This document shows, piece after piece, positions 22,685 through 23,004 of a stretch of DNA of 64,000 nt. This DNA is from Hypanus sabinus (Eukaryota): the NCBI RefSeq assembly GCF_030144855.1, contig NC_082709.1, positions 166,160,001 through 166,224,000 of the forward strand, given 5' to 3'. A program made the translations under genes and the position numbers. Below the pieces are notes generated by a model that was not told the DNA's origin, made no database searches, and saw only the letters and a program-made list of their open reading frames with translations. The stretch's first letter is position 1, and every line of letters starts with the position of its first letter.

Positions 22685-23004
22685 GGGAGCACGACGAAAG
22701 CTGTGTTGCTTTACTGTTGTGAGCTAAAGAGGTGCAGACCTACTGTAATAAACAGGATTGTGTTGACTTTTAGGGTGATGGCAGAACAGGAGCTATGGAT
22801 CAGTGACTGGGAGTGTGCTGTGCTAATTCTTGTGAGCTCAGGGAGGGTTACGCTACAGTAACAGAACCATGTTAACCTTTAGGGTGATGGCAGAACAGGA
22901 GCTATGGATCAGTGACTGGGAGTGTGCTGTGCTAATTCTTGTGAGCTCAGGGAGAGTTACACTACAGTAACAGAACCATGTTAACCTTTAGGGTGATGGC
23001 AGAA
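22685..23004 (+). repeat. 109-bp tandem repeat containing the GART acceptor and ATG (three copies of tttag|ggtgATGGCAGAA)
   Basis: ATGs at 22778, 22887 and 22996. Units 22774-22882 and 22883-22991 differ at 2 positions. A diverged partial unit lies at about 22685-22773. Confidence 0.95.

What the first reader, a model, noticed from the sequence alone, without database searches (positions are those of the whole stretch)
22685..23004. GART start codon and splice acceptor are tandemly triplicated, creating decoy acceptors, uORFs and an N-terminal extension
Seen: tttag|ggtgATGGCAGAA occurs three times at a 109-bp period (exon starts 22774, 22883, 22992). The first two ATGs open the same 27-codon u[30 protein letters not shown] (stops at 22859 and 22968), a diverged copy of the true start MAERVLVIG. 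Use of an upstream acceptor also exposes ATG 22978, which adds MLTFRV in frame to GART. Each unit has a possible donor gtgagc (22832, 22941). The two full units differ by only 2 nt, so the latest duplication is recent. Inference: acceptor choice or copy number could tune translation of a de novo purine enzyme.
Basis: partly seen in the sequence, partly recalled or inferred. Interest (0 to 1): 0.7.

Follow-up and report, generated by a model that had tools for sequence, protein, structure and literature searches.

The report
Repeated acceptor-and-start module in stingray GART
In the Atlantic stingray's purine-synthesis gene GART, the splice site and start codon that open the coding region are present three times in a row; two copies are old (sawfish has them too), the third is new, and gene models use only the last one, so any regulatory role is untested.

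Summary
A 109-bp unit is repeated head to tail at 22761-23004. It gives three identical 18-nt blocks, TTTAG|GGTGATGGCAGAA, at 22769, 22878 and 22987. The two full units differ at 2 of 109 bases. The window is Hypanus sabinus GART: exon peptides match RefSeq proteins 100%.

Comparison with four other cartilaginous fishes changes the history:
- Skate, electric ray and elephant fish have one copy.
- The sawfish Pristis pectinata has two copies with the same breakpoints and a homologous 25-codon uORF.
- So the first duplication is ancient, and only the third Hypanus copy is young.

The unit is about 85 nt of intron 1 (branch-point-like motif, weak pyrimidine tract, AG) plus the ATG and about 7 codons.

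On usage, the three N-terminally extended RefSeq isoforms (MMV-, MSRV-, MLLRGGRIRV-MAERV) are reproduced only by splicing to 22992. No MLTFRV isoform exists. I could reach no stingray RNA contigs, so low-level or NMD-masked use of 22774 or 22883 is not excluded.

The upstream 18-nt block is better conserved than its flanks (P about 0.01-0.02). This fits either selection or gene conversion.

Verdict: a new example of a known kind (tandem duplication across an intron-exon boundary) with unusual persistence. The translational-tuning idea is unproven.

The parts
17585..17676 (+). GART non-coding exon 1, donor TAG|gtgagg at 17676/17677
   Evidence: The 5' UTR of the skate transcript L005 (exon 1 to exon 2 junction verified on the Leucoraja genome) aligns to 17585-17677 at 75%. 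The donor scores 10.4 bits. A CCAAT box and a GC box lie upstream. The 5' end is approximate.
22710..22786 (+). Oldest, decayed repeat copy u0: branch-point-like CTGTAAT, acceptor AG at 22772-22773, then GGTGATGGCAGAA (uATG at 22778)
   Evidence: It aligns to the unit of sawfish, skate and electric ray. Body identity to u1 is 62%, but the 18-nt core is 18/18. The acceptor PWM score is 4.9 bits, higher than the annotated acceptor.
22787..22895 (+). Full repeat unit u1: 11 nt derived from codons 4-7, about 85 nt of intron-type sequence, second acceptor (exon start 22883) and second ATG (22887)
22896..23004 (+). Full repeat unit u2, 107/109 identical to u1. Its last 13 nt are the true start of exon 2 (acceptor used in the gene models, exon start 22992, ATG 22996)
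22778..22861 (+). Potential uORF 1, 27 codons plus TAA. The TAA lies in the branch-point-like CAGTAAC
   Evidence: The ATG context is agggtgATGG, identical to the main start.
22887..22970 (+). Potential uORF 2, the same peptide. The two differences from uORF 1 are synonymous
22978..22995 (+). In-frame ATG giving MLTFRV ahead of MAERV, exposed only if an upstream acceptor is used. Weak context gaaccATGt
   Evidence: No RefSeq isoform carries it.
22992..23140 (+). GART exon 2 (first coding exon in the canonical isoform), donor CAG|gtgaga
   Evidence: Pfam GARS_N, E 1.5e-16. The exon chain reproduces RefSeq protein P0349 exactly over 863 residues.
13594..13601 (+). Coding end of the alternative upstream exon of RefSeq isoform X2 (ATGTCCAG|gc, gives MSRV-MAERV)
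   Evidence: The annotated gene range starts exactly here once aligned on the DNAJC28 ORF. Joined to 22992 it reproduces P0351.
18044..18048 (+). Coding end of the alternative upstream exon of isoform X3 (ATGAT|gtgagt, gives MMV-MAERV). Hemitrygon akajei has the same isoform
18290..18315 (+). Coding end of the alternative upstream exon of isoform X1 (MLLRGGRI, AG|gtac)

Best explanation
Two successive tandem duplications copied a segment of about 107-109 bp. The segment spans the 3' end of GART intron 1 (branch-point-like YTGTAAY, a weak pyrimidine tract, AG), the 4-nt leader, the ATG and about the first 7 codons of exon 2.

The first duplication happened in a common ancestor of sawfishes and stingrays and has been carried ever since. 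The second happened recently in the Hypanus lineage, most simply by unequal crossing-over between the two old copies.

The duplicated piece carries a complete acceptor and start, so the copy next to the exon leaves the gene intact. Productive mRNA is spliced to 22992 and starts at ATG 22996. The two upstream copies lie inside intron 1 as pseudo-acceptor and pseudo-start modules.

If the spliceosome does use them, the mRNA gains 109 or 218 nt of leader with one or two 27-codon uORFs. These uORFs have the same strong start context as the real ATG, and each ends 25 nt before the next GGTGATGG start. That should lower GART translation and could expose the RNA to nonsense-mediated decay.

Shown: the anatomy, the phylogenetic distribution, and the use of 22992 in the gene models. 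Inferred: the duplication mechanism, the near-silence of the upstream copies, and the effect of the uORFs.
For: - **Repeat anatomy:**
- **Identity of the window:** it is H. sabinus GART. The exon chain equals RefSeq protein P0349 over 863 aa. The distance between the DNAJC28 ORF and the annotated gene start is identical to the base with GCA_030144855.1.
- **Copy number in relatives:** one copy in Leucoraja, Narcine and Callorhinchus. Two copies in Pristis at 107-nt spacing, with the same junction (11 nt derived from codons 4-7, then GATCAGTG) and a uORF ending at the homologous TAA.
- **Age of the third copy:** u1 and u2 differ at 2 of 109 sites, while Hypanus and Pristis introns are 70-75% identical. 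That puts the third copy at roughly 5% of the sawfish-stingray divergence.
- **Usage:** RefSeq isoforms X1-X3 are reproduced only by joining their upstream exons to 22992. Joining to 22774 or 22883 gives a stop after 27 codons. No MLTFRV isoform exists in the X1-X4 set.
- **Skate RNA:** the single orthologous acceptor is used.
- **Background:** exon definition, in which enhancers in the exon recruit U2AF to the acceptor bordering that exon, is established (PMC3488318). So is uORF repression with limited re-initiation (abstract of PMC11790910).
Against: - By a crude PWM built from 17 other GART acceptors, the annotated acceptor is weak (1.0 bit, against a mean of 6.1, sd 3.5). The first upstream copy is stronger (4.9). 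Sequence alone therefore gives no reason for the upstream sites to be ignored.
- The upstream 18-nt core is intact in both species while its flanks are 62-83% identical: P(18/18) is about 0.014 for Hypanus and P(>=17/18) = 0.018 for the cross-species comparison. This hints that the upstream copy is not simply decaying.
- Gene models are not read counts. uORF-bearing transcripts could be removed by NMD and so be under-represented.
- The three transcripts that encode isoform X4 could not be inspected.
Confidence: 0.6

Rival explanations
1. The upstream module is a working, conserved regulatory device. A regulated share of transcripts uses the upstream acceptor(s) and so acquires one uORF (sawfish) or up to two (Hypanus). 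These throttle GART translation or route the RNA to NMD. The extra Hypanus copy then strengthens or retunes that brake.
For: - The two-copy state has persisted in two ray orders.
- The upstream core TTTAGGGYGATGGCAGAA is 18/18 within each species and 17/18 between species, against 62-83% in the flanks.
- A branch-point-like motif and the AG are kept in every upstream copy.
- The uATG context is as strong as the main ATG.
- The first upstream acceptor scores higher than the annotated one.
- The uORF frame and stop position are shared by Hypanus and Pristis, and the 6-nt indel between them is in frame.
Against: - No RNA evidence of use; the RefSeq models all point to 22992.
- The uORF peptide evolves neutrally, at about 7 non-synonymous to 2 synonymous changes between species (my codon-by-codon count on the aligned uORFs).
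- Pristis tolerates a 785-bp transposon 1 nt before the upstream AG.
- The Hypanus upstream copy lost 26 nt and is the most decayed copy.
- The conservation statistics rest on 18 sites. They can also be produced by gene conversion from the constrained downstream copy, and the single C/T difference is shared by all copies within each species.
Confidence: 0.25
2. The third copy is an assembly artefact: a false 109-bp expansion, or two haplotypes of one unit written in tandem. The real genome would then have two copies, like sawfish.
For: Only one assembly of this species could be consulted, and no independent contig carries the locus.
Against: - The two units differ at two sites, one of them a CpG transition. 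Stutter or duplication errors give identical copies.
- There is no N in the window.
- The whole array is 327 bp, far shorter than the long reads I would expect such an assembly to rest on (my assumption about the assembly method, not checked).
- A two-copy array is the natural substrate for unequal crossing-over, so a three-copy allele is biologically expected.
Confidence: 0.04
3. The upstream copies act as intronic helper sites. They load U2AF/U2 near a weak real acceptor and so raise its use, without themselves being spliced.
For: - The real acceptor has the second-weakest PWM score among the GART acceptors scored (1.0 bit; exons 5 and 14 score 0.6 and -1.2 in the leave-one-out test) and a pyrimidine fraction of 0.56, equal to the lowest among them.
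- The upstream copies keep the branch-point motif and the AG.
Against: - There is no direct evidence.
- Skate and electric ray have the same kind of acceptor in a single copy.
- A nearby competing 3' splice site is more often a competitor than a helper (my own knowledge).
Confidence: 0.05

Closest known systems
Small tandem duplications across splice sites (Rogers-type tandem-duplication model of intron gain and intron extension; Lehmann et al. 2010, PMC2891723)
   Same: A head-to-tail duplication carries a splice signal, so two equivalent sites flank the repeat. If the outer site is used, the duplicated piece is simply spliced out and the mRNA is unchanged. The paper notes premature stop codons in the intron sequences it attributes to such duplications and suggests NMD played a role.
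   Different: That model concerns duplications inside coding exons that create a new intron. Here an existing intron-exon boundary with the start codon is duplicated, twice. The result lengthens intron 1 and creates latent uORFs rather than a new intron.
Tandem alternative acceptors (NAGNAG and related; PMC2699507 listed)
   Same: Repeated acceptor AGs compete for the same upstream donor.
   Different: NAGNAG sites are 3 nt apart and share one branch point. Here the sites are 109 nt apart, and each has its own branch-point-like motif and pyrimidine tract.
uORF-mediated translational repression with re-initiation (for example PMC11790910, PMC6547434)
   Same: The upstream ATGs are in strong context, the ORFs are short, and the stop lies 25 nt before the next start. 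These features would make them repressive if they are present in the mRNA.
   Different: In the known cases the uORF is shown to be in the mature leader. Here it lies in what the gene models treat as intron. The search listed no paper whose title or abstract concerned a uORF in GART, and I did not open the papers it listed.
Vertebrate GART gene structure (non-coding exon 1, ATG a few nt into exon 2)
   Same: The acceptor lies 4-8 nt before the ATG in every exon-2 ORF inspected from other species and in skate, electric ray, sawfish and chimaera.
   Different: Only sawfish (two copies) and Hypanus (three copies) repeat this junction.

Membership tests
GART (trifunctional GARS-AIRS-GART gene) | The N-terminal exon encodes the GARS_N domain, and downstream exons encode GARS_A, GARS_C, AIRS and formyltransferase | tested here: met
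   Pfam GARS_N, E 1.5e-16. The exon chain in the window is identical to H. sabinus RefSeq GART over 863 aa. The Pfam families of the annotated gene are listed.
Tandem duplication across an intron-exon boundary | Head-to-tail direct repeats whose unit contains the acceptor AG and flanking intron and exon sequence | tested here: met
   TRF period 109, 2.2 copies. The unit is about 85 nt of intron, the AG, and about 24 nt of exon.
Tandem duplication across an intron-exon boundary | A single-copy ancestral state in outgroups | tested here: met
   One copy in Leucoraja, Narcine and Callorhinchus.
uORF-regulated mRNA | The upstream ATG is present in the mature mRNA leader | not testable with these tools
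   No stingray transcript contig was reachable. The RefSeq protein set implies no model with the upstream acceptors.
uORF-regulated mRNA | The uATG is in a good initiation context, and the uORF position is conserved in relatives | tested here: met
   The context agggtgATGG is identical to the main ATG. Pristis has a homologous 25-codon uORF ending at the same TAA. The peptide itself is not conserved.
NAGNAG / short-distance tandem acceptors | Two AGs a few nucleotides apart sharing one branch point | tested here: not met
   The spacing is 109 nt, and each unit has its own branch-point-like motif.
Recursive splice site | An acceptor immediately followed by a strong regenerated donor (AG|GTRAGT) | tested here: not met
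   AGG|gtgatg scores 1.9 bits, against 7.9 +/- 2.7 for real GART donors.
Dispersed repeat / transposon-derived sequence | Further copies elsewhere | tested here: not met
   There is no other copy of the unit in the 64-kb window and no Rfam family hit. The rest of the genome was not searchable.

The most novel reading that the evidence does not exclude
Rays of the sawfish-stingray lineage have kept, since the Mesozoic (my estimate), a second acceptor-plus-start module in front of GART. In this reading it works as a splice-selected uORF brake on de novo purine synthesis, and Hypanus has doubled that brake. Copy number of a 109-bp unit would then be an evolvable dial for translational output of an essential enzyme.
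Probability: 0.15. Interest if true: 0.6.

Novelty: new member of a known kind. Interest (0 to 1): 0.36.

Why it matters
This is a clean, datable natural experiment on what happens when a 3' splice site and a start codon are duplicated together. The gene survives because the exon-proximal copy is complete. The spare copy persists in two ray orders with its core intact and has seeded a further duplication.

If the spare copies are used, GART would be an example of splice-site choice deciding whether an mRNA carries repressive uORFs. If they are not used, the locus shows how strongly exon context overrides raw splice-site strength, because the first upstream site scores higher than the one the gene models use.

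Either answer needs only junction counts from existing RNA-seq of Hypanus sabinus and Pristis pectinata.

Tried and rejected
**Searches and look-ups that led nowhere**
- Exact look-ups of the genomic ORFs 22978-23337 and 22869-22967 found nothing on record.
- Three protein searches for stingray transcript or genomic fragments in the ranges 66-210, 556-1769 and 209-665 aa found RefSeq proteins of rays but no Logan contig of Hypanus.
- The exon-2 ORF hits P0005 and P0003 turned out to be small-intron fishes with no alignable intron.
- DNA of the H. sabinus, Hemitrygon akajei and Mobula hypostoma loci could not be delivered because the files are too large. The date of the third copy within stingrays therefore stays open.

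**Technical dead end and workaround**
- MAFFT mis-places short exon peptides on a single carrier protein. Three carriers were needed to build a usable profile.

**Ideas rejected**
- Transposon origin of the unit: there are no other copies, and the unit is ordinary intron sequence in single-copy species.
- Target-site-duplication origin of the 18-nt block: homology extends about 85 nt upstream.
- ncRNA in the unit: no Rfam hit.
- Recursive splice site: the donor-like part is weak.
- The unit's GTGAGC as a conserved donor: it is lost in both Pristis copies.
- Selection on the uORF peptide: the two u1/u2 differences are synonymous, but that is expected about 1 time in 10 by chance, and the Hypanus-Pristis changes are mostly non-synonymous.
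- Copy-by-copy orthology between Hypanus and Pristis: only one informative site, so it is unresolved.

**Literature**
- Searches gave background only, nothing on this locus.

Full report
**1. The observation**

- Tandem Repeats Finder reports one array: period 109, 2.2 copies, 22761-23004, 97% matches, no indels, score 460.
- The repeat finder shows three in-register copies of a 44-nt block at 109-nt spacing.
- The 18-nt string TTTAGGGTGATGGCAGAA occurs exactly three times, at 22769, 22878 and 22987. This puts AG|G exon starts at 22774, 22883 and 22992, and ATGs at 22778, 22887 and 22996.
- Read as units ending in GAA, 22787-22895 and 22896-23004 differ at 22846 and 22852 only, both G/A; the second lies in a CpG.
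- blastn of the region against the whole window finds only the self-matches (135 nt, 97%, E 1e-61), so this is a local duplication and not a dispersed repeat.
- Rfam finds nothing.
- The two 27-codon uORFs and the MLTFRV extension from ATG 22978 are in the ORF list and in spliced reconstructions.

**2. What gene and what animal**

22996-23139 matches Pfam GARS_N (E 1.5e-16). Earlier notes of this scan called the genome a stingray.

Reaching ray proteins needed a workaround, because the protein search filters candidates by length. I built a profile from three full-length GART proteins plus window-encoded exon peptides and searched with it. This returned the cluster of Hemitrygon, Hypanus, Mobula and Pristis GART.

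Two results identify the window as Hypanus sabinus GART, with DNAJC28 head to head upstream:
- The Hypanus sabinus proteins match the window exon by exon. A splice-aware walk reproduces P0349 exactly over 863 residues in exons 2-19.
- The 361-aa DNAJC28 ORF (11583..12668, minus strand) lies at exactly the distance from the annotated gene start seen in GCA_030144855.1.

**3. Which acceptor is used: the evidence reachable here**

RefSeq lists four protein isoforms for this species:

| Isoform | Length | N-terminus | Upstream exon end in the window |
|---|---|---|---|
| X4 | 1013 aa | MAERV (three transcripts) | not determined |
| X3 | 1016 aa | MMV-MAERV | ATGAT\|gtgagt, ends 18048 |
| X2 | 1017 aa | MSRV-MAERV | ATGTCCAG\|gc, ends 13601 |
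| X1 | 1023 aa | MLLRGGRIRV-MAERV | ...ATCAG\|gtac, ends 18315 |

I located the upstream coding exon ends. Joined to 22992, each reproduces its RefSeq N-terminus. Joined to 22774 or 22883, each runs into the uORF stop.

A transcript using an upstream acceptor would carry the in-frame ATG at 22978 and should have been annotated as a 1019-aa MLTFRV protein. These same models always take the most upstream in-frame ATG. No such isoform is in the X1-X4 series.

So every model whose junction can be inferred uses the third copy. This is model-level evidence, not read counts. No Logan contig of this species covering exon 2 was found in any length class.

Skate gives one piece of real RNA evidence. A Logan transcript (L005) joins exon 1 (L004:293-384) to the single acceptor 4 nt before the skate ATG. 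Its 5' UTR aligns to window 17585-17677.

**4. Comparative anatomy: the main new result**

Four loci could be fetched with DNA: Pristis pectinata (L003), Leucoraja erinacea (L004), Narcine bancroftii (L006) and Callorhinchus milii (L007). Intron 1 of Hypanus and Pristis is alignable over kilobases at 70-75% identity.
- **Single copy.** Skate, electric ray and chimaera have one acceptor-ATG junction and no second ATGGCRGAR within 3-6 kb upstream.
- **Two copies in Pristis.** TTTAGGGCGATGGCAGAA occurs at 7885 and 7992, 107 nt apart.
- **What the unit is.** Multi-species alignment shows it consists of about 85 nt of ordinary intron (GATCAGTGACTGGGAG ... YTGTAAY ... TTTAG, present once in skate and electric ray), then GGYGATGGCAGAA, then 11 nt that are a worn copy of codons 4-7 (CGGGTGCTTGTG became CCGGTGCTGCG in Pristis and CAGGAGCTATG in Hypanus).
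- **Single origin.** The junction, with those 11 nt followed by GATCAGTG, is at the same place in both species. The first duplication therefore happened once, in a common ancestor of sawfish and stingray, after skates and electric rays had branched off. That branching order is my own knowledge of published molecular phylogenies; PMC7617449 notes that relationships among the four ray orders have received different arrangements.
- **The third copy is young.** There are 2 differences in 109 nt. Set against about 27% raw divergence between Hypanus and Pristis introns, this puts it at roughly 5% of the time since their split. The Poisson error on two events is wide, and gene conversion could make it look younger.
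- **Likely mechanism (inference).** Unequal crossing-over between the two old 18-26-nt identical blocks gives exactly the present order: old copy, then two near-identical units, then the exon.
- **Lineage-specific decay.** The Hypanus upstream copy lost the first 26 nt of the unit. Pristis carries a 785-bp dispersed repeat with an 8-bp target duplication AACCTTTA, 1 nt before the upstream AG.

**5. Is the spare copy under constraint?**

Evidence that it may be:
- In the about 55 nt of intron-type sequence before the core, the old paralogues are 62% identical in Hypanus and 83% in Pristis. Cross-species pairs are 71-78%.
- The 18-nt core is 18/18 within each species and 17/18 between species. 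The one difference (C/T two bases before the ATG, in a CpG) is shared by all copies within a species.
- If the upstream copy alone were free to drift at the flank rate, 18/18 in Hypanus has P about 0.014, and 17/18 for the cross-species upstream pair has P = 0.018.
- A branch-point-like motif 21-28 nt before the AG is kept in all copies.

Evidence against selection on a product:
- The uORF peptide changes freely between species ([27 protein letters not shown] against MAEPVLRISGWLRAVLFLVSSSNRL). My codon count gives about 7 non-synonymous to 2 synonymous changes.
- The unit's GTGAGC donor-like motif is lost in both Pristis copies.

The core's integrity fits either selection on the acceptor and uATG, or short gene conversion from the constrained downstream copy. 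Eighteen sites cannot separate the two.

**6. Splice-site strength**

I built a PWM from the 17 other GART acceptors in the window (leave-one-out mean 6.1 bits, sd 3.5). The annotated acceptor 22992 and its twin 22883 score 1.0, with a pyrimidine fraction of 0.56. The first copy, 22774, scores 4.9. The tool is crude, but it shows that the upstream sites are not obviously inferior.

That the models nevertheless use 22992 fits exon definition, in which enhancers in the coding exon and the strong donor at 23140 (12.1 bits) recruit U2AF to the adjacent acceptor (PMC3488318). It also fits loss of uORF-bearing isoforms by NMD.

**7. Consequences if the upstream sites are used**

| Junction from exon 1 | Leader length | Upstream ATGs |
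|---|---|---|
| to 22992 | 96 nt | none |
| to 22883 | 205 nt | one uORF, plus the weak-context ATG at 22978 |
| to 22774 | 314 nt | two uORFs |

Each uATG has the context agggtgATGG, identical to the main start. Each uORF ends 25 nt before the next such ATG, which is a short distance for re-initiation. The general principle is in the abstract of PMC11790910; the distance argument is my own knowledge.

**8. Verdict**

The finding is real and the anatomy is correct. The proposed translational tuning is neither shown nor excluded.

Probabilities:
- Upstream modules largely unused in the steady-state mRNA: about 0.6.
- Used, conserved uORF brake: about 0.25.
- Helper-site role: 0.05.
- Assembly artefact for the third copy: 0.04.

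This is a new, well-dated member of a known class (tandem duplication across a splice junction) and is of moderate interest.

Noticed in passing
window 13594-13601, 18044-18048, 18290-18315: Three alternative upstream exons each carry an in-frame ATG. They give RefSeq isoforms MSRV-, MMV- and MLLRGGRIRV-MAERV. The first appears to use a GC donor (CAG|gcaggt). Hemitrygon akajei shares the MMV form.
   Followed up: partly
window 11583-12668 (minus strand): An intact 361-aa DNAJC28 ORF lies head to head with GART, 926 nt from the first annotated GART start codon. Narcine, Hemitrygon and Callorhinchus have the same neighbour.
   Followed up: partly
L003 7096-7880 (Pristis pectinata): A 785-bp dispersed repeat with the 8-bp target-site duplication AACCTTTA is inserted 1 nt before the AG of the upstream acceptor copy. 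A 77.5% identical copy lies at L003:11509-12267, and related pieces are in the Hypanus window (for example 32494-32918).
   Followed up: partly
protein P0121 (418 aa, representative library): A leucine-rich-repeat, NLR-like protein from an unidentified fish carries two tandem copies of GART exons 2-3 (MAERVLVVGGGG...). It is probably related to the many short 'GART-like' proteins annotated in Xiphophorus hellerii.
   Followed up: no
proteins P0124, P0125, P0129: These full-length GART-like proteins have a changed ATP-grasp motif (KAGGPAARKEV where stingray has KASGLAAGKGV) and fast-evolving sequence. The taxon is not identified. They may be a diverged paralogue or a pseudoenzyme.
   Followed up: no
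window 22992; L004 about 7989; L003 about 7989: An in-frame ATG sits inside the pyrimidine tract just before the exon-2 acceptor in skate, sawfish and stingray (giving MFRT-, MFRA- and MLTFRV-M). It is intronic and so normally invisible.
   Followed up: partly
window exons 3-19 (25054-63198): The complete exon chain of GART exons 2-19 was mapped. The gene runs off the window end at about residue 863 of 1013.
   Followed up: yes
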